Position numbers and translations under genes: made by a program
In this document: positions 1 to 61,902 of the stretch, piece by piece
How the letters are laid out: the number at the start of each line of letters is the position of its first letter
Position numbering within the stretch: the first letter of the stretch is position 1
Assembly: GCA_024704765.1 (NCBI GenBank)
Contig: JAKMXF010000066.1
Span: forward strand, 1,113,883-1,177,882
Length of the DNA: 64,000 nucleotides
Origin: Oopsacas minuta
Lineage: Eukaryota > Animalia > Porifera
Direction: 5' to 3'
Notes under the pieces: model-generated
Database searches by the model: none
Told to the model about the DNA's origin: nothing
The model's input: only the letters and a program-made list of their open reading frames with translations

Positions 1-1250
1 ACCCTCGAGCTAAAATTAATTGAACTCTCCAATGGTACAGTTCCCCCATGTGTTCCATCTCATTATCAGAATTTTAGTGTTAATGCTAAAATAATTGTTT
101 GTTTCTGGAATTAGCAATACAAGTATAATTTGGTTTGTGCGAGGTTAAAGATCAACTACCTACTTATTAATCTGTTTATACAATATGTAATGGTTACAGT
201 CAGTAAACAAATACGATAGCAAATGTCATATTTCCCCCACTACGCTGTATTCTTTCTTGACTCAAATTACCATCATTTTTTTGCGAATACTATGTGAATT
301 ATCTTATTAGTAAAGCCTGGATTATCTCGGGAATTCAAGTGTCATCCATGAGAAAGTATTTTTGCTATATTTCTGGGTATTTTATGGTGGAAAAGAGGAA
401 TAATGTGAAATTCCGAGAAAATTGTAATAGGGGTTGTCACGCATATTTTGCTCACCTCCGCCGCAAATTCGGGAGAATCTTTTTGCATTTATTACAGACC
501 TTCCCTATATTTACAACTATCTCTTCTAATAATGATGTTTCAACCTAATTTACTGGTTAATACCTGTTTTCATTTGTATGATTCAATTCTGTTTTAGTAT
601 TAATAATATCTACAAACCAAAATATACGATCTCCTGTTAACAAATTGTATTATTACATTACATAATCTCTAATTTCAATAATCACATGATGAGGTAATTA
701 TGTATTAATCACATGAAATAGGTAATTTATCCCTTGGAATAAATGTTTTTATCAAAAATATAGATTTCAATTCCCTCGTGACTCGACAATAATACATTAC
801 ATTTCTGATTACAAATATTTTAATCCAGGAATACCATATATCCTAGCAGGTGTTAAAATCTTTTTCTCAGATGCTTGAACTCAGTTTTGTGAATATTAGT
901 TTGTAAATTACCTTAGAAATATCACTAATAACTTGAACTTGAACTTTGAATGATAATTACGGAAATACACTACTTTTTCTAACGATAATTCCAGTTATTT
1001 CAATAAATAGTACTTCCCTTTTATGAGAATAATTGATTGGTGGTTGTACTACATCTTCCCCTTCCCTAAATCCATCCCATGATGACTGATGAGGATAGTT
1101 CATCTTATTGGTAATGCTTCAACAAACAACTTTGCACATGTGTATTACGTGTTTAGAAGATTATTCAGCAATTTGCCAGCTATGCAGCATTTGAATATTC
1201 TACTCTGCTACTGGATATTTTATGTATTTAATATTACGTATTATTCTTAG

Positions 1251-4200
1251 TTAGTTTTCTTCTGCGTTATCATCATCGTTGGAGAAGTTGGGATGGCAGT
1301 TTACGTCTATCTTGAAAGAACCAATGTAAGGCAATACAGTGGAACCTCGTTAATACGAAGGTTATTTAATTGGCATTACTCCGGTGATACGAACTTGGGG
1401 TAAGCGGACAAATTTTGGCAGTCCGTTGGTGTTCGTATTTACGAGATTCCACACAACAATTCTATGAACTTTACTATTATACAATTATTATGACATTGGA
1501 TTATTTCGTTAATTTTCTTATCAAAATCTCTAACAATCATGAAATATGAGAGTAAACTATACGTTTGATTTTCGGTGATCCCGTAACTAACGAAGTATAT
1601 AGTTGTTCACGATCACGAATACTTAGTATGTCACGTAATGCACCATTTTCCTACTAATCATTGTTCTCCACCAAAACTCAAATTGATTTATTCATGGAAT
1701 ACTGAATTATTATTTCAACTATTTTTCACTCTTCAGAAAATTCTGAGATTCTATGATACATCACCGAATCTTGGTGGATAATTTGGGGCCTTATGGTCAA
1801 AATACAGGCTTTTTCAATTTTCTGATCATTGTGAATTTTCTAAATTTCGGACTACGTATTCATGGTTGATTATTTCATAACATTCTAAAATTCCATTTTG
1901 CCATACCCGCTGAATATTTCAACTTAGAACTTTACTCAACTATTTAATTAATTTCCATTCCATTGTGTTTCATCTAGTTAGTCGACTTGCTGCCTTATAT
2001 CTGGAATTTCTTAGATGATACATTAAGAGTAGTATTACAAGATCAGGTAACCACCCCCCCCTACAGGAAGACAGTAATATGATATACTATTACATAAATA
2101 TTTATTGCATTATCTCTGCCTCTCCTGTTATTAATTATGGATTGTTTGGGATAGTCTGTAGTGATATGACTTGCTTACTAATTGATAACATTGATTGCAA
2201 ATTATTCAGCGAATATTTCTTTTATTGAGTTCATTGAAATAAATACAATGAAACAATGATATAATTCATCAATTTCTAACTTTGTAGAACTAGTCTAAAA
2301 TAGTTGGCTCGCCTACCCTATTCGGAAAACCAGTGAGTTGCCCTCTCCCATCTGCTTTTTATCCAATTATTTTTCGATTATCCCAGTCTGTTGCTATGGC
2401 AAAGTTCATCCAAACAACAAGCTATATCTAACAGATATATTTGCATACAATCTCACAATGCAACGCTAATTCCCCGTAAACTGGTGCACCAACAAAATCA
2501 TTTGTCTACACAAACATAAATCAGTATACGATGATTCAAAACATATAGCTTCCGTGTTAACTTAATTTTAGTGAAGATTATAAATCCATGAAAAAACGTT
2601 TTGTAAGTGATCACATGGCATAATGTAATCCTAGCTATCGCTTATCTTACTTGGATATATTAAGAACTTAGTGAATAAATGTGAAAAATCTTAGGAAATT
2701 TCCTAATAACAATCTTCGTATTGATTTGACCAAAATGTACTTTAGTTGATAGCGATTTGATTAATTGATATTACTCAAAATGATTTAAGATATCTTATTT
2801 TAGTTAAAAATATTACATAATTAGTATATTGTGATTGTTATAATACACTTTATTCGTCAGTAATTATGATATTCTTATGATTCTTTTCATTACAGATTTC
2901 TTGTAATTTTTACCACAAATTTCTATAGAAACACATTTTCTGTAAATTTCTATGATTTATCAATTCTCTTTTCTTGTAGCTACGTTGCTGTAACTTTGGA
3001 AATGTTACATTTGGGAACGATACCTTCGTGCCTGCCGTTAGTAATGGTAGCACTTCTTGTATTGAGGGAGTAACTGTAAGTTTGCTATTATATATTTTCA
3101 GCTAATACCAACATGAACTTCTCCTGAATTGTACAGGGCTATAATTTCCTTGGCCTTTCGAAATTGTCAATTTTAAGACAGATTCATGGATGTGTTAAAT
3201 GAGATCAGATACTTAAATAGGGGGGTGACGTCACAATGTTTAATTTGCACTATTCTTTAAAGCAGTTTTTATACATTCATTTCAAAAGAGTTCTCCAAAA
3301 AACTTTCAGCAAAATATGAGTAAATTTTTTAGTAAATTTCTCCAGTATTTCTTACAATTCTCTCTTTCCTCTAATTACTTTCAACACCTCAGAAAAATTC
3401 TATTTGATAATCTAATAGTGTACAATATGCATTTTTGCATAATCTCCTACAATTGTACTGCCTTTAATTCCACGTAGGACTTTGCAACCTAATCTATTCT
3501 GTTAACGTGAGCAAGTCTCAATTCAATAGTCTAAATTCTCCATAAATTATTCAGATAAAACGCCTTAAGTCTGGGATAAGACAAACATAGAAATACAACT
3601 AACTCTATTATAGATTATCTAGCACTGAGCTAAATGGTGATTCGTAGCATTACTTCCATTTGTGCCGTATGTAGATTTACTGCCCGTATTACTGCCTGTT
3701 TTAGTTATTATATTCGAATATTGCATGTAGGTTCTATTTAATTTCAATTTTTTAGCTGATATGTTACATGCAAACAGATTATTACTAGGAATTGCACTGA
3801 ATATTTTCAGAGTTTATTTCAGATTTTAAATGCTGTGCATTTACATTATATGGTTATAACACGTCACAATTCTCAGGAAATTTATTATCTATAATAAGCC
3901 ACGTGAACTAGCAAAGCCATAGCCACTAGTGATATTTTATGGATGTGAAATAATGTTAGAACATATTTAATTGTTTGTAGATTTGGTTACTTAATATCCG
4001 GTTGTGTAACACTTTACTATATCAAAAGAGAACTGAAATCACTTTTGTTTTTGTGAATTTCTCAACGTCTTTAATCTATTTTTGATTTCTATTAAGATGC
4101 ACAATCTGTAAAATATGTTGAACTTCCTTTGACGTCTGAAAATTTTTTCCAGATGCTACATCCTAAAATACACCTATATAATATTTTGTATTATTTTGAC

Positions 4201-47867: not shown

Positions 47868-49898
47868 CTATTTCCTTAACATTTTAGGATTCCTAACGAA
47901 CTCATCTGCTTCTGCTAACAGATCATCAGTTACGTCTTGACTTGGCTGCCATCCTTCGCTATCGCTTGATTCAATCTCTGTGCTGCACGATTCACTGGAA
48001 GAACCGCTGTCATCAAGAAAATCATCTTTCAAATCGTACGAGTTTGTAGTTCCGTCGTCATCACTTGCTCCATCTAGAACACTTTTCTTCTTTGTTTTTG
48101 CAGCTCTCGGCTTTTTTATTCGATGTGAGAATTCTCTAAAATGTGCTGGGTTCTTTCTATAACATTCAGATCCGTATGGACAGATTTTGGTTGGAGTGGT
48201 TGCAATTCCTCGAGGTGGATGAGAATAGCTAGCACGATGATCTGGATTCTTACGATAGCAATCTGCACCATAAGGACATACTGGCAAAATAGCTGCAGTA
48301 CTATCAGTAATTTTATCTGTAATATCAGAATTAGAACTAGTGGGTTCTGGTATGTGAGATGAGTGTAGAGAGTCTGGGCATTCTTTAGATTCTAGAGGGG
48401 GAGCTGGCTTGGAGGTCGTGCCTCCAGAAACTATAGAGTCTTCATGAGTTATGCTAGCATCATTTCTCTCAATCACTGCTGTACTACTACTATTAGAAGG
48501 GGACCTAGTCTTTTTGCTAGTAGCCGATGGCTTTTCTGATACTTTAGTCTCTGTTTCTGGCGTTTTAGTCTCAGTTATCGATTTAACTTTTTTGTTTGAA
48601 GGTATTGCACTTGTATCTTCTAGCATCCAAACAGGTAACTTCCTCTTTTTGTGAGTAGAACTGCTTGAAACAGATCCACCTGTGTCTGTGCCCATTGTAC
48701 TGTCCGAATTACAAGAGTTATTTTCTAAAACAACCTCCATTGCAGGGCCGATTTCATGCTTTTCGATCTCCCCTATACCATTACTCTCGGAATTAACTGC
48801 TGGGATCTCAGCTGTTTCGGTCGTTTTCTTAGAAATCTTCAAAGGATCAGTATCAATTTCTTGTGTAGAAGTAAACTCATCATGATCATCAGCAGGAATA
48901 CATACTGTCTCTGCCGGAATTTTTAAAGTTTCCATATTGTCTGGCACAATTTCCTGTGTGGAATTCATTTCAACTGTATCTGGTATACATAATGTCTCAC
49001 GGAGGTCTGTGGGTATTTCCACCGTTTCCAATGGATCAGCTTCAATTTCTTGTGTGGAATTAAGCTCATCAATACATAATGTATCGGTATTATCTATATG
49101 ATCTTTATACGTTTCCAAAGGATCAACATCGATTTCTGGTGTAGAATTAAACCCATCACTATTTCCAATTGGATGGTATAATGTTTCGCAGTTATCTATA
49201 GGACTTTTAAAGGTTTCTAAAGGATCTAGATCAATATCTTGGTCATCACTCAAACTCGTAGGTATATACAAAGTCTGGCTCGTGTCTGTCGGGATTTGTA
49301 AAGTTTCCAAAGGATCAGCTTCAATTACTTGTGTGGAATTCACCTCTAATGTAGCATCAGGGATATGTAGTGTATCACAGTTATCTATAGGATATTTGAC
49401 TGTTTCCAAAGGGTCTGCATACTTGCCAGAATTCACATCAACAGAATCAGCAGGAAGTAATAATGTCTCAGACGTTTCGACTGGACTTTTGAACGAATCC
49501 AAAGGATCCAGATCAATTTCTTGCGTAGGGGATACTTCATGGTTGTCAATGGGTAAGTATAATGTCTGGTCAGAAGATGAATGCTTGTTATCAACACGAA
49601 AGAACAGTTTGTCAGGAAGAAATGAGAATCTATCCCCATGGCATAATTCTATTTCTTCATCTTTATTAAGAACAACAGTCTTATCAGAGCCTAGTTTATG
49701 TACAAAGGTAGGATTTGTATGTACAGACTTTATGCTTAATTTGGTTTTGGCAGAGTCCAACACGAGTTGTGCGTGATTCCGAGACACAGATTTGTCAGTC
49801 ACTTTTAAAATATGGCCTCGACCTACCAAGATTGTGTCTGTCAGTTGTAGTGGCTTATGATGGCATCCAGATTCAGATTCAATATAGAAAGAAGACAT
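47868..49898 (-). CDS. APLF: Aprataxin and PNKP-like factor with an inserted acidic repeat array, intronless
   Basis: N-terminal FHA (LVGRG..KSVSRNHA), Ku-binding motif KRKLPVWML, tandem PBZ fingers CPYGADCYRKNPDHRASYSH and CPYGSECYRKNPAHFREFSH, acidic tail YDLKDDFLDD...SEGWQP. Confidence 0.92.
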   Translation of the reverse strand: MSSFYIESESGCHHKPLQLTDTILVGRGHILKVTDKSVSRNHAQLVLDSAKTKLSIKSVHTNPTFVHKLGSDKTVVLNKDEEIELCHGDRFSFLPDKLFFRVDNKHSSSDQTLYLPIDNHEVSPTQEIDLDPLDSFKSPVETSETLLLPADSVDVNSGKYADPLETVKYPIDNCDTLHIPDATLEVNSTQVIEADPLETLQIPTDTSQTLYIPTSLSDDQDIDLDPLETFKSPIDNCETLYHPIGNSDGFNSTPEIDVDPLETYKDHIDNTDTLCIDELNSTQEIEADPLETVEIPTDLRETLCIPDTVEMNSTQEIVPDNMETLKIPAETVCIPADDHDEFTSTQEIDTDPLKISKKTTETAEIPAVNSESNGIGEIEKHEIGPAMEVVLENNSCNSDSTMGTDTGGSVSSSSTHKKRKLPVWMLEDTSAIPSNKKVKSITETKTPETETKVSEKPSATSKKTRSPSNSSSTAVIERNDASITHEDSIVSGGTTSKPAPPLESKECPDSLHSSHIPEPTSSNSDITDKITDSTAAILPVCPYGADCYRKNPDHRASYSHPPRGIATTPTKICPYGSECYRKNPAHFREFSHRIKKPRAAKTKKKSVLDGASDDDGTTNSYDLKDDFLDDSGSSSESCSTEIESSDSEGWQPSQDVTDDLLAEADEFVRNPKMLRK

Positions 49899-50350
49899 TA
49901 CTTGGTTGTCTCAGAGATTTAAATAATTTTAGCTAATTGAAAATACAGTAGGTTCTGATTAACAGTGCTACAGGAAAATATTACAATTTTCTGTACTTTC
50001 TTTCCCAAAATGTAGTCGGAAATTGTCATTTATTGATGTGAACTTGGATATACGTACAAGGAACTTTATCATAGTGGTTGGTATGTGGTAATTGGGGTCA
50101 CTTGGACAGAAACAGTACCATATATAGTGTTAGATTGCTTAGTTATTAGGACAACACATCGATTCAGCTTAATCGGTCAAATAACTGCTATTGAGGTAAA
50201 TGTAGTTGTTAATGAGATCTACATTGTACGAGCAGGACCAACACTAATTTTAACTAGTAATTATCAACACATGGTTTGTTATTATAAAATTCGGGTTTTG
50301 TCTCTGGAATTGCGGTATCCGATCATTTGTATTCATCACTTTTTTGCAAT

Positions 50351-50818
50351 CTAACTCAATGAATACACAGACAACTGTATGTTAGTTTCCTTGAATGTAT
50401 CGATTAGAATCTGTTTCACATCTTTCCAAACCAGACGATCAAGACCGCAGCCTATTTTCGGTAAGCAAAGCTCCTTAACATCATTTAGCACGCAATGGTC
50501 TCGCATAGCACATACAGCTTGTCTTAGAGAAGCAAGTTTTGGCTTGTAGTTATATTTCTCTTTAGTTATGAGATAGTATATATAACGGGAATTATCCAGA
50601 AGCACTGAACACTCTCCGATTTCCTTATTTTGAGCCTTGAGAGCTGCTACTCCACCGAATTTCTTCTTGAATATGACAGCAATCCCCTTCCCCATGTGCA
50701 GATCTCTACTCACACAGTGGCCCATACTAGCAGTAGCAGGACAACTGAATAGATCGCCTACTCTCTCAGTTAATATGCTGTCCTTGCAAGGGTCTATTGG
50801 GATATTTTTCTCTGCCAT
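50351..50818 (-). CDS. OARD1: ADP-ribose glycohydrolase OARD1/TARG1 (macrodomain)
   Basis: GDLF, HCVSRDLHMGKGIAVIFKKKFGGV, RYIYYLITK, LPKIGCGLDRLVW. Confidence 0.93.
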   Translation of the reverse strand: MAEKNIPIDPCKDSILTERVGDLFSCPATASMGHCVSRDLHMGKGIAVIFKKKFGGVAALKAQNKEIGECSVLLDNSRYIYYLITKEKYNYKPKLASLRQAVCAMRDHCVLNDVKELCLPKIGCGLDRLVWKDVKQILIDTFKETNIQLSVYSLS

Positions 50819-51227
50819 CAGTTAAGGCTATGTCTCATAATTATATTTAAAATCTCAAATTTGATTACATCGTCTATGACACATCATTTTAAACCAAATT
50901 TGGCTAAAATGCATTTCCAACCGTTCTACTTAGAATACAGTGATTCCACAAACAGGGCTTGTGGAAACGGGGAAATTCTGTAAATTGAGTAAAAGAAAAT
51001 AGATCGAATTCCTGGTTCCAAATAAATGAACCTCGAAAAACGAAGAATTTGGCGTAGATGCGAGTGTATTTAAACTAGGGATATACAACTGTATTTTTAC
51101 AGACTATTTATCTAATCTATTCGGACTATGGATAAGTTACAGAAAGTTAACTCTAAAGTAAAAACAAAATCTAACAAACATGTACTACTACCCAGTAATA
51201 ACTAATAACTCACCATGCATACCATAA

Positions 51228-53576
51228 CTAATTCTCATCTGTATTAACAGATTCTAGACACAAATCATCTAACATTTCTTCCAGAGCAATAGTAGGTGCT
51301 TGATCTTCACCGGAAGGAGAATCTACTGTATCCATTACATCACTGTCACTCGTCATGACGTCATTAATATCCATACCAACAGGTGCTTTCCTCCGATGTC
51401 TCTTTGCATAAGGTTTCTTATAAATATTTACCTGTTTCCTCATTTCTTTATCTTCCTCCAATTCTTCCATGAATTCTTCTAACCCGTCTTCTCTGTCTGT
51501 TTCCATCTCACCTAGTCTCTTCAACTCCCATTTCCGGTTCTTAGACCTGGTTACGCTATCCCCATAGTATTTCTTCAGGATAATGACGTCAGGTAGTCTT
51601 GTAATGTCTCTGTCAAAATCTTTTTGAAGATCAGAGCTGAGATTTAGATTAGAAGTTTTTATACAAAATCCAATAGCACAATCTCCTGGTTTTAAGATAT
51701 GACCTAAGTGAGTACGTGAATGTATCTGCTGGTCCTGTTCCGATCCTATAAGACTTCCCTCCTGCATGCGTAGTAGCCATAAATCTGATAGTGTATTGTT
51801 AATGGGTGTGCCTGAACCTCTTGAGTTACGAACTAAACCTAAATAAACGGAATAGATCAAGTATACGTATTTTCGGCTATTTTCGACTGGAATAGGAGGA
51901 ATAACGTGATATCCCAGGAAAATATCAAAAATACCATAAATTTCCTAGACCTATGATATACCTTTTTGAAACTTCAGATCAACTTCATTCTCCAACACAA
52001 GGAATTGTAGCAAATTCTTAGGATTGGACAGAACAGGGAAAGGTTGTCTCCAATACTGATTACTACTAATCTCACAGGTTTGAAGAGAGAGAGGATCTAT
52101 CAAGTGAATAACTTGAGCTACTTTAGTACAAATAAGAGGACCTTGTGATATGTTACCAAGGGAACGAGCGAGGCTCTTAGGAATATATACAACATCGTCT
52201 TTACAGATTGGGACGACTTCTACTGCGTAAGCGAATTTGTAATCATAAGTGTTGTTATGTGTGTCATGAGAGACTAGCTCCTTAGACAATTTGTATCTAA
52301 TTGGAAGAAATAACGAGTTGAAATGTGGGAGAGTAATAAATCAATAGTAAACTCCTGTTATATCGTACACAGATACGAAATACCTGCTTATATCAACTAT
52401 CTATGAAGTACTCGATAGACTACAATTACTATTAGAATTATAATATCGGTATAACCTGCAAGGAACAACTTCTAGAAAGAAATCCACCAATTTCCTAGCT
52501 TGATCCTGTTGCAGAAAGAAGAAATCTAATCCATCTGGAGACGTCTTTATCTTACTAACCCTCTTATGAGGTTGTAATTTAACCATCAACTGTTCTAAGT
52601 ATAATAACGTTTTCTTATGTACAGCTCTCTGACGTAATTGTACAGTAGCACGCCATGAAGTGTTAGTTTCAGCTCTATGGCAGTCAGAACAGATTAGATG
52701 CATTACTATAAACTCTACATGGCATTTCTGTTGTAGGATTGAGCCCATTACGTCAGCTTGTAATGTCAGCCATACTTTTATTCGTCTGGAATGAGGCTCT
52801 GTCCAAGTGAATCCGGCATCTACTAATCTAGATTGATAGTTAAGCAATATAAACCGAATTAGATGTGTACAGTCAGTCAGCTCCCGTTATATCAAATTAC
52901 CCGCTTTTATGGAAAACTGAAATTGTACAAATATGGTTCCAAACTGTCAAAGTAACAAATATTTCAACAGTCATACCGAAGTAATTATCGAGGTCCCTTG
53001 AGCTTCAATATAACAGGAGTTGACTGTACATAAACTCATAGTTTCGGTGAGTTTCTAGTGTATCTTATCAACCGAAAAATCACTTCTATTCGAAGACATT
53101 AGAAAGTTGTTGAATATCTAATATCCTATACCGAAAGTATTATAATACTATTGTTTCAGTTTATAAGACACAACATTGATGCGATACAAAAGTTGAGTGA
53201 AAATTTCGAAATCAAACAGCTTACACATATCTTACCTAGGTTGATCTCTACCACCATATCCTTTTATCTTCTTAAGACAATGAGCCAGTAGCTCTCTGCT
53301 CTCTATGCTAACATTTAACCATGAATTAGGAGGTTGTAGATAACGGTCACAGAATCTGCACCACTGTAACTGATTCTGTGTAGAAATAGACTGGGTAACA
53401 TTCACCTGTGCTTTCAGACACAATATGCACATGCTGGTGGGATTAGGTGTTATTGATTCACCGCACATACAACATACAATAGTTGGTAACGTGGCGTCAT
53501 CAAATATATCCTTTTGAATAGCGTTTTGTACTACTTGAGGAGTATCTGAATCAAATACAATATTACTGCTAGCCAT
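51228..53576 (-). CDS. NMD3: 60S ribosomal export adaptor NMD3, four exons
   Basis: Exons 53576-53236, 52827-52456, 52296-51962 and 51838-51228 give CCMCG.SI.PNP..MC..CL, ESRELLAHCLKKIK, RLVDAGFTWTEPHSRRIKV, SHDTHNNTYDYK and FMEELEED.EMR..VNIYK. Confidence 0.95.
52870..53026. mobile_element. MITE family A copy in NMD3 intron 1
   Basis: TA-CAGTCAG(TCAG)CTCCCG ... GGAGTTGACTG-TA; interior collinear with the 43312 copy. Confidence 0.85.
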
Positions 53577-53635
53577 TAGAAACTGAATGAATAGAATAAT
53601 ATTAAATTTGGAAATTACTAAGACCCCTGGAATGA

Positions 53636-53928
53636 GAAACTTGTTTCAGCTACACACGATGTCAATCTAAGCATGTGGCCGCGGCATTTCATTACCTCAT
53701 TGTTCTATGAAGTTATCATACTACAAAGTGGCCAATTCATGGAAAATTTCAACGACTCTACTTATAAATGTTATTTAAGCGTGTTAAAGAGGTCTGTGAA
53801 GTTAAAATCACTACTATTCACCAGTTATCTAGTCGATATGTTGAATTTCACTGAGAAAATGGTAAAATATTAGCAAAACTCATGTGGCAGGTAAACTTGA
53901 TGCGGGAAGTGGAGCTGAAACAAGTTTC
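53636..53928. mobile_element. About 300-bp MITE family E
   Basis: GAAACTTGTTTCAGCTACAC ... GTGGAGCTGAAACAAGTTTC terminal inverted repeats; collinear second copy at 58677-58980. Confidence 0.85.
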
Positions 53929-54000
53929 CAACTAACATAAAGCATTTCAATAAATTGATAATCTTGCATTGAAAATTATTCCTAAACTATTATGACGTAA

Positions 54001-54438
54001 TTATTTCTTCCCTGGTACAACAATCTGTAACAATTCTCGTATTTTTCTCCGTAATCTATTCTGATTAGGTCCTGTTATGATACCAACTCTCTCTTTATTT
54101 CTAAAGAATAAAGTCTTTGGCACTGCGTGTATGTCAAAGTGCTGCACAACTTTCGGCACTTCCTCAATATCGACGCTTATTATATCAACATCAGGGAATT
54201 CTGTAGCTAACTTCTCAAGAGCGGAGAGAGCGAGTCTACAAGGAGGACACCAGTTGGAGAAGAAGTCGATCAGTACGAGTTTGTCAGGTTCTTGACTCTG
54301 TAGAATGTTACTGAGTGCTTGGAATGAATTTATGGATTGTATTTGTGTAGTGTTTGTGTGTGTGGGGGCAATCAGAGAGAAGTTTAGCTGAGGTAGTCTC
54401 AGGTGTAGGAATGCACGAACATAGGCTCGTCCTAACAT
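54001..54438 (-). CDS. Thioredoxin with N-terminal extension (mitochondrial TXN2-like), WCPPC active site
   Basis: KLVLIDFFSNWCPPC, SVDIEE, the cis-Pro motif AVP, and G before the final helix. The Arg/Leu-rich, acid-free N-terminus resembles a transit peptide. Confidence 0.88.
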   Translation of the reverse strand: MLGRAYVRAFLHLRLPQLNFSLIAPTHTNTTQIQSINSFQALSNILQSQEPDKLVLIDFFSNWCPPCRLALSALEKLATEFPDVDIISVDIEEVPKVVQHFDIHAVPKTLFFRNKERVGIITGPNQNRLRRKIRELLQIVVPGKK

Positions 54439-54784
54439 TTGACTAAATATCTAACAATGCGTAAATTAGAATATCTTCATAATTACAAAATATTGATTTG
54501 AAGCAAACTACTAAATGTATTATTTAAAAAGCCATAATTAATTGTGATGTCATAGACAATTAAAGTTGCCATATCTCATAAGATTTTCAATTATTTTCGA
54601 TAGTCTTAAATTGAAAAAATGTAGTTCATAGTGTCCTCTTTCAGTAAAATTAGTATTTGCAAAGACCTCGCATTCTCTAAGAATATTTAGTCTATTAAAA
54701 ATTGCAATAATTCCATACATGGAAGTAAAGTTTACACAGTAGAGCTAATCTTAATTTTCATATGCAATTTGAAAGTTTTTGAAA

Positions 54785-54911
54785 CAGTGGATGCCGATCC
54801 GGTTGGGGAGTAGCAATACACGTTCTTATAACCGGCATAAATATACGAGAAAATTTTTCAAGAGGATGGCGCATGTCCCTATTACCAGTGTTCTTAAACC
54901 GGCATCCACCG
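54785..54911. mobile_element. MITE family C
   Basis: CAGTGGATGCCG ... CCGGCATCCACCG-TA inverted termini. Confidence 0.75.
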
Positions 54912-55128
54912 TATCATGACATGCTGGCAATAGTCTACCTCTCCCATATAAATATTCTGTGTACAAAATTATAATTAGTGAATAAGTAAATTAATATAGG
55001 ATATAGCAGCAAAACATAAATGAAAATATACGTACTAAAATAATAAAGTAGACCTATACAGAAGCAATTATCTACAATCAGAGAACTGAAGTACAAATAC
55101 AAGATTGTGTACTCAGAAATAAATATGT

Positions 55129-56127
55129 TTACGGATATTTAGAGGCCCCACCCAACTCGTGAGCTTTCTCCTCCTTTTCCACTACACCAGCTTTCATGCG
55201 GTTTATCATGACCGCGGCATTGACTACTTTAGCCCAAGTCTTACGGGTTTTAGTCTTATTCATATTTCCGGTGAAATGTGAGTGAACTGATCCATGTTTG
55301 TCCGTTTTTATCCAAGGATGTTCAAGCGCCTCTTTACACGACATACGTAGTGTGGGATCGAGGGTAAGAAGCTTGGAAATGAAATTCTTAGCTGTTTCTG
55401 AGATTTCATCCCAATATGGCGATTCGTATTCATACTCACCTTTCTTTATCAATTCGAATAGCTGTAGATCATCTTCATCATAGAATGGTGGATAACCGCA
55501 TAATAAGATATACACGATAATACCCAAGGACCAGAGGTCCACTGCTTTGTTATAAGGCTCCTGACGGAGAACTTCTGGAGCTACGTACCCCGGCGTACCC
55601 ACAGCTGTCTTCATTAGGTCACCGATTGGAATCTTAGAGAGTCCAAAGTCAGACAGCATAATCTTTGAATTCTCAGATTTGTCGAATAGAAGTAGATTTT
55701 CAGGTTTCAAGTCTCTGTGTACAATTCCAGATTCGTGTAGATAGTCAATAGCCCGTAACAGCTGTAAGGTAATTCCCTTACCGTCTGCTTCTGTATAGTT
55801 ACCACGCTCTACTATCGCGTCGAATAATTCGCCTCCTTCCACCATCTGCATTATGAGGTACAAATACGCGTCACTGTCGATTACGTCATACATTCGGATG
55901 ATGTTAGGATGGTCCACTTTCTTCATAACATCAATTTCGTTCTTGAGAAGATCGTCTTTGCCCAAAAGTTGCTTTTTGTTGATACATTTTATAGCAACCA
56001 TATTACCCGTTGCCAAATTTTTCGCCGAGACAACTTCCGAGAAAGCTCCGTGACCCAGGACGTCAAACAATTTGTAACGTTTCGTTACCTTCTCCCCGAA
56101 CATTTTCATATTAATCTTTCCAGCCAT
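55129..56127 (-). CDS. CAMK1: Calcium/calmodulin-dependent protein kinase I, intronless
   Basis: LGHGAFSEV, VAIKCINKK, GGELFDAIVERGNYTE, HRDLKPENLL, MKTAVGTPGYVAPEVL..EPYNKAVDLWSLG, YWDEISETAKNFI, and a calmodulin-binding W...VNAAVMINRM segment. Confidence 0.95.
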   Translation of the reverse strand: MAGKINMKMFGEKVTKRYKLFDVLGHGAFSEVVSAKNLATGNMVAIKCINKKQLLGKDDLLKNEIDVMKKVDHPNIIRMYDVIDSDAYLYLIMQMVEGGELFDAIVERGNYTEADGKGITLQLLRAIDYLHESGIVHRDLKPENLLLFDKSENSKIMLSDFGLSKIPIGDLMKTAVGTPGYVAPEVLRQEPYNKAVDLWSLGIIVYILLCGYPPFYDEDDLQLFELIKKGEYEYESPYWDEISETAKNFISKLLTLDPTLRMSCKEALEHPWIKTDKHGSVHSHFTGNMNKTKTRKTWAKVVNAAVMINRMKAGVVEKEEKAHELGGASKYP

Positions 56128-56466
56128 TTGTGTGCAGAATCTAACACACAAAACTATTTATAATATTGGTAATAGATAAATTTAAGGAAATGCTTAGTAG
56201 TGCTTTCAGTACAATTATCTGATAACAGCAAAGCATAATGATGTTGGCCAAGAGGATATGAAATTACATAAGAATGTTTGGTGAAATTGTAGCAAACAAT
56301 AGCGACTATTATTGCTGTCTTTAAATAATATTATAATGAAACTAATTACGATATATATGACGGTGTAATATGATCTCGAAATAGGACCATACATCATACA
56401 GTATTCAGTACTTATACCACGCTACGTGAGGTAACTACCTTATTTAGGTAATTTTGGATATTATAA

Positions 56467-56488
56467 ACACACACACACACACACACAC
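56467..56488. repeat. (AC)11 microsatellite
   Basis: Direct reading; 17 nt upstream of the kinase-Claw ATG, in the divergent gap shared with CaMKI. Confidence 0.9.
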
Positions 56489-56505
56489 GAGTTGTCATAG
56501 GAAAA

Positions 56506-59500
56506 ATGCCGAAGTATCCAACTGTGAAAGAAATGAAACAACAGCGTAATGCCAGTAAGAACCAATTCACTCAAACGAATGAGTTCGTTTGGTGTAAAAT
56601 GAACCAGTTAGGGAAGGGGGCATTCGGTACAGTGTATTTGGGCTGGAGAGAGCCAGATGAAGAGTATATTGCAGTCAAGGCAATCCCTCAAACAACGATA
56701 GATATGGAGGAAAAAGTCAAACTGTTCTTGAAACGAGAAATCGAGATAATGAACACACTCAAAGGAGCTCCTTTCATTGTACAACTCATGTACTTAGAAA
56801 GGAACGCAAACGGTGTGAATATGTTTATGGAAATGTGTGATACAGATCTAGAAAAACATCTAGTAACAAATAAAGTTACTCAATTACAGCTGATTCGGTT
56901 TATGCAGCAAATAGCAATTAGTATCAATGCAATGCATGCCAAAGGAATTGTGCATAGAGATCTCAAGCCAGCAAATATCCTTATAAAGTATAGAGACACA
57001 AATATGCAAGAATTCGACATTAGGTAACAAATAAATTTATTATATGTACAGTGAAACCTCTACAAACGGGAGCCTGTGGAAACGGAGAGAAAATACATAG
57101 AGCGAATTCCGAGCTTATTTCGGCTGTTGCCTGTGAACCGGTTTGTGGAGGTTACACTGTATAACGATATTTGACTGTGACTACGTATTTTCAATGTATA
57201 GATTGGCAGATTTCGGGTACAGTCGTTTCTTCAAGACAGAAGGCCCCGAAGGAATGGAAATCAACAATATGCTGGATTCAGCAGCTGGCACCCCTGTATA
57301 CATGGCTCCAGAAGCTCTGGCTTGTGTTGTGGAACAAAATGCGCATTATAACCAACTCGTGGATATTTGGAGTGCAGGAGCTATCATATACAGAGTTGTA
57401 GTCGGTGAGTACATAGGGTAAACCAGCGGTTACCAATCTAGGATCCGGAGACCCCTTGGTGGTCAACGGACGACAGCAGGGGGTCCACATGATCTCAAAA
57501 TTTGTATTGCAGTCTATAGGAGGAGGAGAAGGACCACAGAACCTGTTAAAATTGGTATATTCAGGCATTTCCCTATTACACTTGAAAATATCCTGAAATA
57601 TCTCAAAATAGCAAAGTTTCGCAAGGAATTACAAAATTTTTGAAGTGAACCTCTGGAGGGTTGTCGAATATGTCCACTACCCGACGAGTGACGACCAGAC
57701 GTTAGTTGTTATTAGTGTGTGTGTATTAGGTGAACACGGATTCTACCATAGAATGCAAATGACAATGCAGGAACTCTTGAATGTTATCCGCAAGAAAGGC
57801 ACAGCTATTGGAGTAGTTGTAAATCCAAAAGGAAAGCCAATCTACATCAAGGAACTCCCTGAACAGACGGAAGATATCTTGAATCCACAAATGAAGCAGA
57901 CGGTTTCTTCAATGATCAGAGAAATGCTACAAGTTGAACCTCAGCTAAGAATGACAACCAGCAAGTTCTTACAGACTGTTGACGATATTGCAGTTTCTAA
58001 ATTCAATGTTATCTCCGTACACACAGGACAACAAACTAAAGTACCTATTAACCAGGAAATGACCTTGGAAGAGTTGGTACACACGTTAGCAAAGGATTTC
58101 AAGGGTAAGCACATTCAATTTCAAGCAAGGTTTGGCACCGATGCGAAATATTGGACATAAAAAATATCGAAAATATCGATGTACGTATGTATTGGGATTT
58201 CCAGAAGAAATATCGAAAATTATCCAAAAAATATCGATATTTTCGATATTTTTCTGTATTTTAACGAATTTTTCCTATTTTTAGAAATATCGTATCGAAA
58301 ATTTTAACCGATTTCAATGTTTGCCAAACTTTGTTTCCAGAAACTTTATCAATGTTTTCTATTTTGAATAGAAATGCCAGTAGCTGAAATGCACTTAATA
58401 TACGAGTCTCATACTAGTGAGAATATTGTCGCTACAAACGACCAGCTAAAGAAACTCTTAGAATTCCTAATGAGGTCATCCCACAAACCAGATGTTTTCC
58501 TTGTAAGCGGTGCTCTCCTCAAAGAGCTGGATCTCCCATACGATGAAGACATTAATGTTACAGCTAATCTATCTGCACTTTTGCAAATCAAGAGCAAGCG
58601 AGAATTGAAGGCGCAAAACAATACAGTTCTACTACCCCAGGTTGGATTAGTATAATTACGTCACACATATAAATGGGAAAACTGTTTCAGCTCCACATGA
58701 GCATGCGAGTGGGCGGCATTTCATTATCATTATCATTTTGTGACGTTATCATATTGTTAAGTGGCCAATTTATGGAAAATTCAACAACCCTACTTCGAAA
58801 TATGTTTTTTAAGCGTGTTAAAGGAGGTCTGTGAAGATAAAATCGCTACCATTCACCGGCTATTTACTAAATATATTGTGTAGTTGAAATACACTGATAA
58901 AATGGTGAAATATTGAAAATATTCATGCGGCCTGATGCAGCAGATAAACTTGATGCGGGCAGTGGAGCTGAAACAAGTTTATAACTACCAGTAGCCTAAA
59001 TATTAAATGTTGCTTTAAATAATGAAGTTCTATATTAGGTATGTAAGTCTACAATGGAGGAATACCAAAGTCTTCAGAAACAGCAACTAATAGGTTATCA
59101 AGCATTCATAACACACAGCATAAATGCAGTATCAAGATTTCAGGTCATAATATCCAGAACTGAAAAGGCACAGTCTGCAATGGACGCACAAGTCAATACA
59201 GTATTCAGATGTATTGAAGATGCAGTAGACTCCTTACAAGCACATGGATATGAAAATGAAGTCAATTCGTTACATGGAATAGACGAGGAATTGAGAGGAA
59301 TTATGAATTACATACAACAGTGCAAAGGCAAAGTAATAACAGCCTTTGAAACACAAATGAGGCAAGTTAAAGATATCAAGAGGCGAATGGGAGAACTCTC
59401 CAGTGACGATGTTATTATCTCCGCACAGAAAAAGTGTAGAGAAATTACAAAAGAATCGTTAGACTCACAACTCGACAAATCTGAAGATTTGTTAATGCTT

Positions 59501-60851
59501 TTAAATACTAAACAGAAATACTTCAATGATCTGTTACATCTGAAGTTAACAGGCCTCAATAATACATTGACTAAGTTAGAAGAGCAACAAGGAGAATTAG
59601 TTAAAGTTGAAACAGAGATTATTCCAGAACATGCGCGGAAAGTTGAGAAGCTAGGCAGGAGAGTTAACAAGACTGCGTTGGCTACTATCGCGGGTGGGGC
59701 AGGGTCTAGAGTTGAGAAATTCGAGAATCCTGAAGTTACAAACTTGAAAGAAAATCTCCAAGAAACGCAGCGAGAAAAAGATGAATTCAGTGATAAGGTA
59801 TGCAATCGAAATATATTTATTTGTTTCTGATAAAATGACAGTACAATGGACAGTCAAAACTTACGAGAATTTATTGAACTGTACAGTTAACTCCCGTTAT
59901 ATTGAAGCTCAAGGGACCGAGATAATTACTTCGATATAAACGATGAAATTTATGGTACTTTTGACAGTTTGGCACCATATTTGTACATTTTAAGAATTCG
60001 AAATAAGCTGATATTTCGACATATCCGTGTACGATATAACTGAAGTTGACTGTAAAGTAAACCTCTTTAATAGGAACATGGTCGAATTTCCAGATAATAG
60101 GACTAAAATAGACACAAATCCGCTCCCTACAATTGTAATTCAATTGGTATTACTCCGGATAAAGAGAACATATTTTGACAATCCGTTGGTGTTCGTAATT
60201 ACAATAAATAACGAAGTTCTACTGTGTTTACATTTAATCGTGAAGGTTGAGAAGTTGAAGAAACAGAGTGCAAAGGATAAAGGCCTTGTAGATAAGTTAT
60301 ACTTTAGATTAATGAAGTACAACAGATGGTTTGAAGACATTACCAAAGAGTTAGAGCTAGATGATACAGACAACAAACAAGATAAAATAGTCGATGAATC
60401 TTTCCTTGAATTAGACAGCTCAATACCAAACGAAATACGAAATTGCGTTCGCAAGGCAATACTTACAGATACAATAAAAGTTAGAGAGAAGATTATACAA
60501 AACAGAGACGACTACCTTACTTCAGAAGACGACAAGATATCCGTGAATAACCTCAAGGCAGGAGATCATGTATTGTTATTACCAAGCAAGGCAACTAGCA
60601 ATGTTCGTGCACACGTACACGTACCGCGTATATTCACACTTGAGACCAATCAACTATACTTTTTAGACGTTGAAAGTTACGAAAATTTTAAATTAGAAAT
60701 GAAAAAAGATTTTACTTCCTGTGTAACCGGTATTTTGACTGAAGATCCGAAACAAAAAGCAGCTCTAGCGAGAGAAGATTATCCCGTTACTCAATTCGGT
60801 ATGATTTTCTACACAGTCAAGGCAAAGCCTAAAATACAATCGGCTTTATAG
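56506..60851 (+). CDS. 909-aa Ser/Thr kinase (IKK/TBK1/ULK-like) fused to a FIP200/Atg11-like body (ubiquitin-like domain, helical scaffold, coiled coil, Claw); six exons
   Basis: Exons 56506-57023, 57202-57404, 57730-58104, 58372-58640, 59039-59797 and 60246-60851 have compatible phases and total 2730 nt. Kinase motifs GKGAFG, IAVK, REIE, HRDLKPAN, ADFG, MAPE. Ubiquitin-like VISVHTGQQ...TLEELVH. C-terminal KISVNNLKAGDHVLL...LYFLDVES...FYTVKA. Confidence 0.85.
57049..57159. mobile_element. MITE family B copy in kinase intron 1
   Basis: TA-CAGTGAAACCTCTACAAAC ... GTTTGTGGAGGTTACACTG-TA. Confidence 0.85.
57424..57560. mobile_element. hAT/Charlie-like MITE (family D) in kinase intron 2
   Basis: CAGCGGTTACCAA start; interior shared with the 25460 and 47637 copies. 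Confidence 0.7.
58126..58333. mobile_element. MITE-like element with internal AATATCGA repeats in kinase intron 3
   Basis: CAAGGTTTGGCA ... TGCCAAACTTTG (11/12 inverted match); interior has repeated AAATATCGAAAATATCGA and its inverse. Confidence 0.6.
58677..58980. mobile_element. MITE family E copy in kinase intron 4
   Basis: AAAACTGTTTCAGCTCCAC ... GTGGAGCTGAAACAAGTTT; collinear with 53636-53928. Confidence 0.85.
59884..60052. mobile_element. MITE family A copy (opposite orientation) in kinase intron 5
   Basis: TA-CAGTTAACTCCCG ... GAAGTTGACTG-TA; interior is the reverse complement of the 43312 copy. Confidence 0.85.
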
Positions 60852-60984: not shown

Positions 60985-61902
60985 TTAGAAACTCTTCGCG
61001 GCGTAAAAGAGGAATATCACTGGTGGAACAATAAATATGAGTGCGGGTAATAGAGGTACGCAGATAGTAAGAATAGCCACACCGCAGATAGTAAATATTA
61101 CAATTTCTTGGACAACTTTAAACCAACGTAATCTTTTGGTGACCTTTTTGCTACCCAAAATGGTGTATCTATCACAGGCATTGACTTCCCATTTATCTCC
61201 TCCGTGACCGCCGAGAAGAGTATTTGATTTTGATGTTTCTTTACCGCAGTTGTAGCACCAGTAACAAGAACATTTGATACAATTCATGCTTGGACATCCT
61301 CCATCACGTTGAGTAGGTACTTGACATCTTGGACATCTGAATGCGTTCTGTTGATGATTGACTCCGTCCCAATCCTTGGTCCATTGATTGAATTGATTGT
61401 TTTCATCTAAATTATCTTTGCATGATATCCCTGCATGAGTTGGTCCATAGCAAAAATAACACCAGGGTTTATAGCAGGTCGAACAGAGCATCTGATTGAC
61501 TTTAGTAGAACTTTTTGTTGAAGATTTTGCCTTTTTCATCAACTGGTAATTTTGCTCGCTAATACTCGTAATGTGTGAGCAATTTGGACAGGAGCGTTTT
61601 GTCGGTGAATTATCAGCATTCAATTTTAAAAGTGCTATCTTATTTTTCTGTGTCAGAGATATAAACTGATTAACAAGCTCGTCCGTGAGTTTTTGTGGAC
61701 ATCCAGGCATTGGACATGGAAATAAATACTGTCCATCTTCAATGCGATATTCTATATAAGATCTGAGACATTCAGCGCAAGCATACATCCAACAACAATG
61801 CAGCATTTCACATCTCCCATCAGAGACTGGTGTATTAGTGCATAAAGGACATAATTCTTCTTCTGTAGCACCTAATGAACTGTTTTCTATAGGATATTCC
61901 AT
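60985..61902 (-). CDS. RBR E3 ubiquitin ligase with C-terminal transmembrane anchor (RNF217/RNF144-like), intronless
   Basis: RING1 CPLC..CC..AC.ECLRSYI..CPMPGC; IBR CPNC..CSTC.KPWCYFC..H..C; RING2 CPRC..QRDGGCPSMNC.KC..WCYNC; hydrophobic tail IVIFTICGVAILTICVPLLPALIFIVPP. Confidence 0.9.
   Translation of the reverse strand: MEYPIENSSLGATEEELCPLCTNTPVSDGRCEMLHCCWMYACAECLRSYIEYRIEDGQYLFPCPMPGCPQKLTDELVNQFISLTQKNKIALLKLNADNSPTKRSCPNCSHITSISEQNYQLMKKAKSSTKSSTKVNQMLCSTCYKPWCYFCYGPTHAGISCKDNLDENNQFNQWTKDWDGVNHQQNAFRCPRCQVPTQRDGGCPSMNCIKCSCYWCYNCGKETSKSNTLLGGHGGDKWEVNACDRYTILGSKKVTKRLRWFKVVQEIVIFTICGVAILTICVPLLPALIFIVPPVIFLFYAAKSF

What the first reader, a model, noticed from the sequence alone, without database searches (positions are those of the whole stretch)
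56506..60851. A kinase-FIP200 chimera: IKK/TBK1/ULK-like kinase, ubiquitin-like domain, scaffold and Atg11 Claw in one protein
Seen: six phase-compatible exons give 909 aa. All catalytic motifs are intact, with an activation-loop Ser (MLDSAAGTP). The C-lobe has an IKK/TBK1-type insert (KGTAIGVVVNPKGKPIYIKELP). It is followed by a ubiquitin-like domain (KFNVISVHTG...KPDVFLV, resembling the FIP200 N-terminus KLYVFLVNTG...NPIFLF), a helical and coiled-coil region, and a terminal Claw (KISVNNLKAGDHVLL...IFTL...LYFLDVES...G.IFYTVKA). Known: FIP200 has a ubiquitin-like domain, scaffold and Claw but no kinase. TBK1 has kinase, ubiquitin-like domain and scaffold but no Claw. Their scaffolds are structurally related, and they normally cooperate as separate proteins in selective autophagy. 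I know of no described protein with both ends. Inference: a self-contained cargo-sensing autophagy or innate-immune initiator kinase, either a lineage-specific fusion or a relic of the common ancestor of TBK1/IKK and FIP200.
Basis: partly seen in the sequence, partly recalled or inferred. Interest (0 to 1): 0.93.

Follow-up and report, generated by a model that had tools for sequence, protein, structure and literature searches.

The report
Kinase fused to autophagy scaffold Claw
This animal genome, and at least four related species, carries an expressed gene for one protein that joins an active-looking kinase to the scaffold and cargo-receptor-binding "Claw" of the autophagy proteins FIP200/Atg11, parts that normally sit on separate proteins.

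Summary
Six GT-AG exons (56506-60851, + strand) give a 909-residue protein with no stops. An RNA-like run shows all five junctions at the predicted bases. Four other species keep the same six exons, phases and gene neighbours, with dN/dS 0.05-0.18 in every domain.

Exons 1-2 are a protein kinase with all catalytic motifs. The last exon passes Pfam's own cut-off for the Atg11/FIP200 Claw in all six sequences tested (22.2-25.4 bits, cut-off 22). A model of exon 5 (pLDDT 78.8) is a long three-helix bundle. Its best solved match is the scaffold domain of IKKbeta (Z 15.9), followed by IKKalpha, TBK1 and the FIP200 N-terminal domain. Unrelated helical bundles reach Z 12.9, so this support is moderate.

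Not supported: the kinase core is closest to ULK/Atg1, not TBK1/IKK. The ubiquitin-like domain could not be tested because an intron splits it.

No relative was found outside this clade, and no paper describing the architecture. The likeliest reading is a lineage-specific fusion, not an ancestral relic.

The scan noted a second such chimera on another piece of this genome (s1-284878); I did not check it.

The parts
56506..57023 (+). Exon 1 (aa 1-173, phase 2 end): N-terminal tail, kinase N-lobe and catalytic loop (GKGAFG, Lys58, HRDLKPAN)
   Evidence: Pfam Pkinase 104.6 bits. The best solved relatives are ULK1/ULK2 at 63 bits. Junction to exon 2 is seen in RNA.
57202..57404 (+). Exon 2 (aa 173-241): DFG, activation loop with Ser199, APE, subdomain IX
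   Evidence: Pfam Pkinase 44 bits, profile positions 140-191. Aa 192-257 are invariant in five species.
57730..58104 (+). Exon 3 (aa 241-366): end of the kinase C-lobe with a roughly 20-residue insert (aa 263-284), kinase end at about aa 325, then the first half of the putative ubiquitin-like domain (from aa 331)
   Evidence: Only the alphaH-alphaI part is weakly recognised as kinase (GAK). The insert weakly resembles beta-hairpin blades. No TBK1_ULD or ubiquitin profile hit.
58372..58640 (+). Exon 4 (aa 366-455): second half of the putative ubiquitin-like domain (ends KPDVFLV 404-410) and a conserved linker
   Evidence: The fold is untested. dN/dS is 0.07-0.09 for the ubiquitin-like region. 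No Pfam or PDB sequence match.
59039..59797 (+). Exon 5 (aa 456-708): long three-helix scaffold bundle, then the start of the C-terminal helical region
   Evidence: AlphaFold2 pLDDT 78.8, helices 2-68, 72-137 and 141-219. Best PDB matches: IKKbeta scaffold domain Z 15.9, IKKalpha 14.2, TBK1 13.3, FIP200 N-terminal domain 13.1. Unrelated bundles reach 12.9.
60246..60506 (+). Exon 6, first part (aa 709-795): helical, probably coiled-coil stalk before the Claw
   Evidence: Helices in a low-confidence model only. A weak coiled-coil profile hit. Coiled coil was not tested.
60507..60851 (+). Exon 6, second part (aa 796-909 plus stop): Atg11/FIP200-type Claw domain
   Evidence: Pfam PF10377 ATG11 scores 22.2 (window), 25.4 (L001) and 22.9 (L002) bits against a cut-off of 22, covering profile positions 31-131 of 132. 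All 6 of 6 sequences match. dN/dS is 0.09.

Best explanation
This is a real, expressed and long-conserved gene for a single 909-residue protein.

Shown:
- A catalytically competent Ser/Thr kinase domain (aa 28-325).
- A roughly 250-residue three-helix scaffold (aa 456-680) of the kind found after the kinase in IKK/TBK1 and in the N-terminal domain of FIP200.
- A C-terminal Atg11/FIP200 Claw (aa 796-909) behind a helical stalk.

Inferred:
- The roughly 90 residues between kinase and scaffold form a ubiquitin-like domain.
- The non-kinase part (ubiquitin-like, scaffold, stalk, Claw) is a compact Atg11/FIP200-type body.
- The head is an Atg1/ULK-like kinase. That would make the protein a lineage-specific fusion of two partners that elsewhere work as separate subunits of the autophagy-initiation complex.

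Likely mechanism, all inferred:
1. Scaffold, stalk and Claw make a dimer.
2. The two Claws dock on cargo-receptor motifs.
3. Clustering brings two kinase heads together.
4. The heads autophosphorylate the activation loop at Ser199 and then phosphorylate receptors or autophagy factors on the cargo.
For: - Gene model: RNA junctions, and five orthologous sequences with identical exon structure and synteny.
- Selection: dN/dS is 0.05-0.18 in every domain, and silent sites are saturated between the window and the others.
- Kinase: Pfam Pkinase, with invariant catalytic motifs.
- ULK affinity: ULK1/2 are the best solved matches to the N-lobe (63 bits), with ULK3 also listed. ULK1/2 are again among the top matches of the activation segment. 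The named hits of the large search are mostly ULK/ATG1 and none is TBK1/IKK.
- Claw: PF10377 above the curated cut-off in 6 of 6 sequences, aligned to the end of the profile and of the protein.
- Scaffold.
- Literature: Atg11/FIP200 proteins are defined by a ubiquitin-like domain, an Atg17-like domain and the Atg11 domain, and artificial dimerisation of Atg1 bypasses Atg11 (PMC7511232). The FIP200 N-terminal domain resembles the TBK1 ubiquitin-like and scaffold domains (PMC7337493). The Claw is a dimeric cargo-receptor-binding module (PMC6477179).
Against: - The Claw scores sit only just above the cut-off, and the six sequences are not independent.
- Direct searches of solved structures did not recover the FIP200 Claw.
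- The model of the last exon failed (pLDDT 39.5), so there is no fold evidence for the Claw.
- No piece hit the Atg17-like profile.
- In the search that does not rely on Foldseek, generic three-helix bundles scored as high as IKK1 and higher than TBK1 and FIP200.
- The margin of ULK over other kinases is small, about 5 bits on the N-lobe.
- The ubiquitin-like domain is untested.
- From the residue list in PMC6477179, and from my own memory of the human FIP200 sequence, the two arginines of the phosphopeptide pocket (R1573, R1584) appear to be replaced by Asp/Asn886 and Thr898. If so, the ligand may differ from that of FIP200.
Confidence: 0.5

Rival explanations
1. The protein is a divergent member of the IKK/TBK1 family (kinase, ubiquitin-like domain, scaffold domain). 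Its usual C-terminal adaptor-binding tail was replaced by the stalk and Claw of FIP200. It would then act like TBK1, recruited through a Claw.
For: The order kinase, roughly 90-residue domain, roughly 250-residue three-helix scaffold is the IKK-family layout. The best solved matches of the scaffold model are IKKbeta (Z 15.9, residues 432-663), IKKalpha (14.2) and TBK1 (13.3, residues 410-657), each covering the whole scaffold domain. The kinase has roughly 20 surplus residues between subdomains IX and XI. From memory, IKKbeta and TBK1 have an insert of similar size and pattern there.
Against: TBK1 and IKK are absent from the best 40 and 59 solved kinase matches and from the named hits. No hit to the Pfam TBK1_ULD, TBK1_CCD1 or IKBKB_SDD profiles on any piece. 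Generic bundles score close to the IKK/TBK1 scaffolds.
Confidence: 0.25
2. The C-terminal domain is not a true Claw. The Pfam match would be a borderline false positive, and the protein a lineage-specific kinase with a helical scaffold and an unrelated C-terminal domain.
For: Scores are only 22-25 bits. No hit to solved Claw structures by sequence. The exhaustive search with the last exon found no FIP200/Atg11 protein. The structure model failed. The protein-language search was uninformative.
Against: The E-values (1.5e-5 to 2.5e-4) are already corrected for the whole Pfam library. All scores for the whole last exon lie above the curated cut-off; the window's Claw-only piece scores 21.6. In L001 and L002 the match runs to the last profile position and sits at the extreme C-terminus behind a helical stalk, as in FIP200/Atg11. 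The conserved motifs are those I remember from the FIP200 Claw.
Confidence: 0.12
3. The protein is a surviving form of the ancestor of both TBK1/IKK and FIP200. TBK1/IKK would have lost the Claw and FIP200 would have lost the kinase.
For: Shi et al. proposed an evolutionary link between TBK1 and FIP200 (PMC7337493). Earlier notes in this scan, which I did not check, call the host a glass sponge, an early-branching animal.
Against: The gene was found only in one clade of closely related sequences. Atg11/FIP200 proteins without a kinase exist across eukaryotes (PMC7511232), so a kinase-bearing ancestor would need many independent losses. The kinase is ULK-like, not IKK-like.
Confidence: 0.05
4. 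The gene model is an artefact and the kinase and Claw exons belong to separate genes.
For: The exon 5>6 joint rests on one short contig with 21 nt on its shorter side. About 10% of the RNA depth retains intron 5.
Against: The joint lies exactly at GT..AG, at depth 1210, similar to the other four. In the orthologues this intron is only 50-56 nt, which leaves no room for a promoter. The frame, phase and exon lengths are conserved in five species.
Confidence: 0.02

Closest known systems
FIP200/RB1CC1 and Atg11 (scaffold of the autophagy-initiation complex)
   Same: Both have a C-terminal Atg11-homology Claw behind a helical stalk (Pfam PF10377). Both have a helical scaffold, and the FIP200 N-terminal domain is among the better structural matches here (Z 13.1). 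There may be a ubiquitin-like domain before the scaffold; its end, KPDVF, lies where I would place the NPIF motif that PMC7337493 reports at the end of the ubiquitin-like domains of TBK1 and FIP200.
   Different: This protein has a kinase domain at its N-terminus, which no described family member has. It is far shorter (584 non-kinase residues against more than 1000). It has no detectable Atg17-like profile. The basic pocket residues that bind phosphorylated receptor motifs seem not to be kept (inference).
TBK1/IKKepsilon and IKKalpha/beta
   Same: The order is kinase, a roughly 90-residue domain, then a roughly 250-residue three-helix scaffold. The IKKbeta, IKKalpha and TBK1 scaffold domains are the best solved matches of the exon 5 model. 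There is an activation-loop serine.
   Different: The kinase sequence is not IKK-like. There are no TBK1_ULD, TBK1_CCD1 or IKBKB_SDD profile hits. The C-terminus is a Claw rather than a TANK/NAP1/optineurin-binding or NEMO-binding tail.
ULK1/2 and Atg1
   Same: These are the closest kinase domains by sequence in solved structures and among named database hits. They are the kinases that normally work with FIP200/Atg11, and dimerisation by Atg11 activates Atg1 (PMC7511232).
   Different: Identity is only about 30-35%. There is a C-lobe insert of roughly 20 residues. No piece hit a profile for the C-terminal tandem-MIT/EAT domain that binds ATG13. Here the kinase is covalently joined to the scaffold.

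Membership tests
Eukaryotic protein kinase superfamily | Pkinase profile match with intact Gly-rich loop, VAIK Lys, HRD, DFG and APE | tested here: met
   Pfam PF00069 scores 104.6 and 44 bits on exons 1 and 2. The motifs are invariant in five species.
Atg11/FIP200 family | C-terminal Atg11 domain (Claw), Pfam PF10377 | tested here: met
   22.2, 25.4 and 22.9 bits against a cut-off of 22. All 6 of 6 sequences match, best E 1.5e-5 on a Claw-only piece (1.7e-5 in the six-sequence scan). Profile positions 31-131 of 132 are covered in L001 and L002 (30-88 in the window), at the C-terminus. The match is borderline and no fold confirmation was possible.
Atg11/FIP200 family | Atg17-like domain, Pfam PF04108 | tested here: not met
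   No hit on any exon piece of three species at E up to 1-10. The scaffold model does resemble the FIP200 N-terminal domain, Z 13.1 and 9.3.
Atg11/FIP200 family | N-terminal ubiquitin-like domain (CDD cd17060) | not testable with these tools
   The candidate domain (aa 331-412) is split by intron 3 in all species. A spliced sequence has no reference that could be handed to the tools. The two halves gave no hits.
IKK/TBK1 family | Kinase domain that groups with IKK/TBK1 by sequence | tested here: not met
   TBK1/IKK are absent from the best 40 (N-lobe) and 59 (activation segment) solved matches, and ULK1/2 are best for the N-lobe. The named hits are mostly ULK/ATG1 and none is IKK/TBK1. No tree was built.
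IKK/TBK1 family | Three-helix scaffold/dimerisation domain after the ubiquitin-like domain | tested here: inconclusive
   The best solved match is IKKbeta 432-663 at Z 15.9, with TBK1 410-657 at Z 13.3. Unrelated bundles reach Z 12.8-12.9, and no IKBKB_SDD or TBK1_CCD1 profile hit was found.
IKK/TBK1 family | Ubiquitin-like domain between kinase and scaffold (Pfam TBK1_ULD) | not testable with these tools
   Same reason as above. The position and length fit, but the fold was not tested.
ULK/Atg1 family | C-terminal tandem-MIT/EAT domain that binds ATG13 | tested here: not met
   No such profile hit on any piece. The C-terminal half is scaffold plus Claw instead.

The most novel reading that the evidence does not exclude
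The protein is a living representative of the ancestral kinase, ubiquitin-like, scaffold and Claw protein from which both TBK1/IKK (by loss of the Claw) and animal FIP200 (by loss of the kinase) descend, kept only in glass sponges.
Probability: 0.05. Interest if true: 0.9.

Novelty: new variant of a known kind. Interest (0 to 1): 0.64.

Why it matters
In all studied organisms, the kinase that starts autophagy (ULK/Atg1, helped by TBK1 in animals) and the scaffold that recognises cargo receptors (FIP200/Atg11) are separate proteins. They must be brought together.

A natural single-chain version is a 'Rosetta stone' fusion. It independently supports the functional coupling of the two parts. It also bears on the proposal of Shi et al. 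(PMC7337493) that TBK1 and FIP200 share a scaffold by descent.

It could serve as a compact model for testing whether cargo-driven clustering of a Claw is enough to switch on an attached kinase. It would also be the first kinase reported with an Atg11-type Claw.

All of this rests on computation. The value depends on confirming the Claw and the ubiquitin-like fold, and on showing kinase activity.

Tried and rejected
- First exon 5 acceptor (59048) was wrong. RNA shows 59039.
- AlphaFold2 of exon 6 with two sequences failed (pLDDT 39.5), so no fold search was run on it.
- Sequence searches of solved structures gave nothing for exon 6, the Claw alone or exon 5. Exon 3 gave only a weak match to the end of a kinase domain (GAK). 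Exon 4 gave only chance hits. FIP200, TBK1 and IKK never appeared.
- Protein-language searches of exons 3, 5 and 6 were uninformative.
- Fold searches of the scaffold model in the AlphaFold cluster library and the ESM Atlas returned only generic helical proteins.
- The exhaustive search with exon 6 found one cluster only, the L001 orthologue. Word-indexed searches with exons 6, 3 and 1 found only close orthologues plus generic kinases.
- I tried to pull in weak Atg11-domain hits with a very high E-value limit.
- The next-best kinase hits P0012 and P0013 were followed to their contigs. They are unrelated microbial-eukaryote kinases: L010 reads only with a non-standard code, and L011 is an EF-hand, Asn-rich protein.
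- Four literature searches found no paper describing a kinase with an Atg11/Claw domain.
- The full-length spliced protein could not be handed to the Pfam, structure or homology tools because it has no reference. I did not type it in. Every test that needs kinase plus ubiquitin-like domain, or the whole chain, was therefore left out.
Full report
**1. The observation**

The region 56506-60851 holds six open pieces on the + strand. Joined at GT..AG sites they give 2730 nt, which is 909 codons plus a stop, with no internal stop. My first try used an acceptor at 59048 and gave 906 aa.

Four public runs of one sample hold the locus. Three behave like DNA, with even depth across introns. The fourth, X4, behaves like RNA. 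Its exon depth is about 900-3000, against 8 in intron 3, 3 in the non-repeat part of intron 4 and 119 in intron 5.

Only X4 shows five joints with GT..AG ends, exactly at 57023>57202, 57404>57730, 58104>58372, 58640>59039 and 59797>60246, at depths of 886-1210. One 460-nt contig carries the end of exon 1, all of exon 2 and 233 nt of exon 3.

It has only 21 nt on its shorter side. It is nonetheless exact, deep, and backed by the comparative evidence below. About a tenth of the depth retains intron 5.

**2. Relatives**

An exhaustive profile-free search of 1.8 billion representative proteins with exon 6 found one protein only. Its contig (L001) carries the whole gene in the same neighbourhood.

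Word-indexed searches with exons 6, 3 and 1 added further loci:
- L002 and L003, two near-identical contigs of one sample that look like two haplotypes.
- L004, L005, and L006 to L008.

L006 and L007 encode essentially the same protein as L005. L008 lacks the 5' end and was not modelled.

All of them have six exons of 518, 203, 375, 269, 759 and 600 nt. The window's last exon is 606 nt. Phases and splice signals are the same, and their introns are only 47-210 nt.

The proteins are 907 aa and 78-83% identical to the window's. Silent sites are saturated between the window and the others. In the two less diverged pairs dN/dS is 0.09 and 0.07 overall. It is 0.05-0.18 in each domain and 0.09 in the Claw.

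The flanking genes are conserved too: an FHA-PBZ protein, a macro-domain protein, NMD3, thioredoxin, a CaMK-like kinase, this gene, then an IBR protein. So this is one old, constrained gene, not a chance run of open frames and not two genes.

**3. What the parts are**

*Kinase.* Exons 1 and 2 match Pfam Pkinase (104.6 and 44 bits), and every catalytic motif is invariant. A 66-residue stretch from the activation loop to the start of exon 3 does not vary at all in five species.

The best solved relatives of the N-lobe are ULK1 and ULK2 (63 bits). Next come a plant-type calcium kinase, ULK3, and then others at 50-58 bits. For the activation segment the best are phosphorylase kinase, STK33 and CaMK1, followed by ULK1/2.

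In the large protein collection, after the orthologues (308-379 bits) there is a gap down to 98 bits. The named hits below the gap are mostly 'ULK/ATG1', 'unc-51-like' and 'ULK2'. None is TBK1 or IKK. The head is therefore ULK/Atg1-like by a small but consistent margin, and it is not IKK-like by sequence.

*C-lobe insert.* The end of the kinase domain is recognised only weakly (a match to GAK's last helices). The distance from subdomain IX to XI is about 20 residues longer than the Pfam model allows. The surplus is the invariant stretch at 263-284, which weakly resembles beta-hairpin blades. Whether it is 'IKK/TBK1-type' could not be tested.

*Ubiquitin-like domain.* The candidate (aa 331-412) is cut by intron 3 in every species. 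A spliced sequence has no reference, so I could not scan or fold it. Its two halves hit nothing. Its position, length and hydrophobic pattern fit a beta-grasp domain. It ends in KPDVF, roughly where I would place the NPIF motif that Shi et al. report at the end of the ubiquitin-like domains of TBK1 and FIP200 (PMC7337493). This remains a lead only.

*Scaffold.* AlphaFold2 on exon 5 with three sequences gave pLDDT 78.8 and three long helices. Foldseek's first hit in the Protein Data Bank was IKKbeta.

A second alignment of Foldseek's best chains gave:
- IKKbeta 432-663: Z 15.9
- IKKalpha 429-660: Z 14.2
- TBK1 410-657: Z 13.3
- FIP200 N-terminal domain in the ULK1 complex core: Z 13.1
- Best unrelated bundle: Z 12.9

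Each of these matches covers the whole scaffold domain of its target.

An independent search over cluster representatives is more sobering. There, unrelated three-helix bundles (12.8) tie with IKK1 (12.5) and beat TBK1 (11.5) and FIP200 (9.3). I read this as follows. The fold is a long three-helix scaffold. The IKK/TBK1/FIP200 kind is the best match and fits the context. But the structural evidence alone is moderate.

*Claw.* Exon 6 matches Pfam ATG11 (PF10377) at 22.2 bits in the window, 25.4 in L001 and 22.9 in L002. The curated cut-off is 22, and the E-values are already corrected for the whole library (1.6e-4 to 1.7e-5). All six sequences tested match.

In L001 and L002 the alignment runs from profile position 31 to 131 of 132 and ends a few residues before the C-terminus. 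Cutting away the helical stalk does not remove the match.

Against this:
- No solved Claw was recovered by sequence.
- The exhaustive search found no FIP200 or Atg11 protein.
- The model of exon 6 failed.

I put the Claw assignment at about 85%.

**4. How it probably works**

Three findings from the literature bear on this:
- The FIP200 Claw is a dimeric module that binds cargo-receptor motifs through a basic pocket: R1573, R1584, K1569, F1574 (PMC6477179).
- In fission yeast the main job of Atg11 is to dimerise Atg1, and artificial dimerisation of Atg1 bypasses Atg11 (PMC7511232).
- IKK and TBK1 use their scaffold domains to dimerise (established knowledge).

In this protein, a kinase is covalently attached to a scaffold, a stalk and a Claw. 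The most economical mechanism is a constitutive dimer. Its two Claws would dock on receptor-coated cargo. Its kinase heads would be activated by proximity, through activation-loop phosphorylation at Ser199. They would then act on the receptors or on downstream autophagy factors. All of this is inference.

One caution. I aligned the end of the Claw to the human sequence from memory. That memory agrees with the residue numbers printed in PMC6477179. In this alignment the two pocket arginines correspond to Asp/Asn886 and Thr898. The ligand may therefore not be a phosphorylated receptor motif.

**5. Parentage**

Two one-step histories fit the data.

(a) An Atg1/ULK-like kinase domain was joined to the front of a compact Atg11/FIP200 paralogue. 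This explains the ULK-like head and lets one parent supply the ubiquitin-like domain, scaffold, stalk and Claw. Two of these, the ubiquitin-like domain and the Atg11 domain (Claw), are among the three hallmark domains of the family (PMC7511232). The scaffold would stand in for the third, the Atg17-like domain, although no piece hit that profile.

(b) An IKK/TBK1-type kinase gained a stalk and Claw. This explains the compact scaffold and the C-lobe insert, but not the kinase sequence.

I favour (a) at about 0.5 against 0.25. The 'ancestral relic' reading gets 0.05. The reasons are that the gene is confined to one clade in every search, and that kinase-less Atg11/FIP200 proteins occur across eukaryotes.

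**6. Host**

Earlier follow-up notes of this scan call the genome a glass sponge (Oopsacas minuta or kin). I did not verify this. The few introns of a few hundred bases fit the published description of that genome (PMC10280926).

First-stage notes also report a TBK1 gene, an IKK-like pair and a second 'kinase-FIP200 chimera' elsewhere in the genome (s1-226698, s1-226736, s1-284878). None of these was checked here.

**7. Novelty and verdict**

Four literature searches found no described kinase with an Atg11/Claw domain, and no database relative was found outside the clade. The parts are all known kinds, and the combination is new: a new variant of a known kind.

- The architecture is largely supported.
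- The TBK1/IKK label for the kinase is not supported.
- The ubiquitin-like domain and the function remain to be shown.

Noticed in passing
window 57004-57154, 57457-57607, 58816-58966, 59873-60023: The introns of this gene hold very high-copy repeats: DNA-run word depth reaches 17,099 against roughly 70-300 in the neighbouring exons. The orthologues lack them, and their introns are 47-210 nt. These are probably recent mobile-element insertions in this species.
   Followed up: no
window 60985-61902 (-): A 305-residue IBR/RBR-type zinc-finger protein with a hydrophobic C-terminal tail lies tail-to-tail 133 nt downstream. It keeps this position in at least L001, L004 and L005. A ubiquitin-ligase-like neighbour of an autophagy-type kinase could be a functional pairing.
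   Followed up: partly
window 47868-56151 (-): A conserved gene block sits upstream in the related loci: an FHA plus two PBZ fingers (APLF-like), a macro domain, NMD3 pieces, thioredoxin, and a CaMK-like kinase placed head-to-head with this gene.
   Followed up: partly
window 57259-57781 (aa 192-257, spanning intron 2): Sixty-six consecutive residues, from the activation loop into the first residues of exon 3, are identical in five species whose silent sites are saturated against the window. This is far more constrained than the rest of the kinase and suggests a docking or regulatory surface.
   Followed up: no
window 57795-57860 (aa 263-284): The invariant C-lobe insert weakly resembles the hairpin of YVTN beta-propeller blades from an archaeal surface-layer protein. 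It is probably a beta-hairpin.
   Followed up: no
window 60777-60815 (aa 886-898): The positions that I align with the FIP200 pocket arginines R1573 and R1584 are Asp/Asn and Thr in all orthologues. The alignment to human FIP200 is from memory, so treat it as a lead only.
   Followed up: partly
window 56470-56489: A (CA)n microsatellite lies 16 nt upstream of the start codon.
   Followed up: no
window 59798-60245: Intron 5 is retained in about a tenth of the RNA-like depth (118.8 against 1210).
   Followed up: no
L002 and L003: Two contigs of one sample carry 99.9% identical copies of the gene at depths labelled 350x and 166x. They are probably two haplotypes assembled separately.
   Followed up: no
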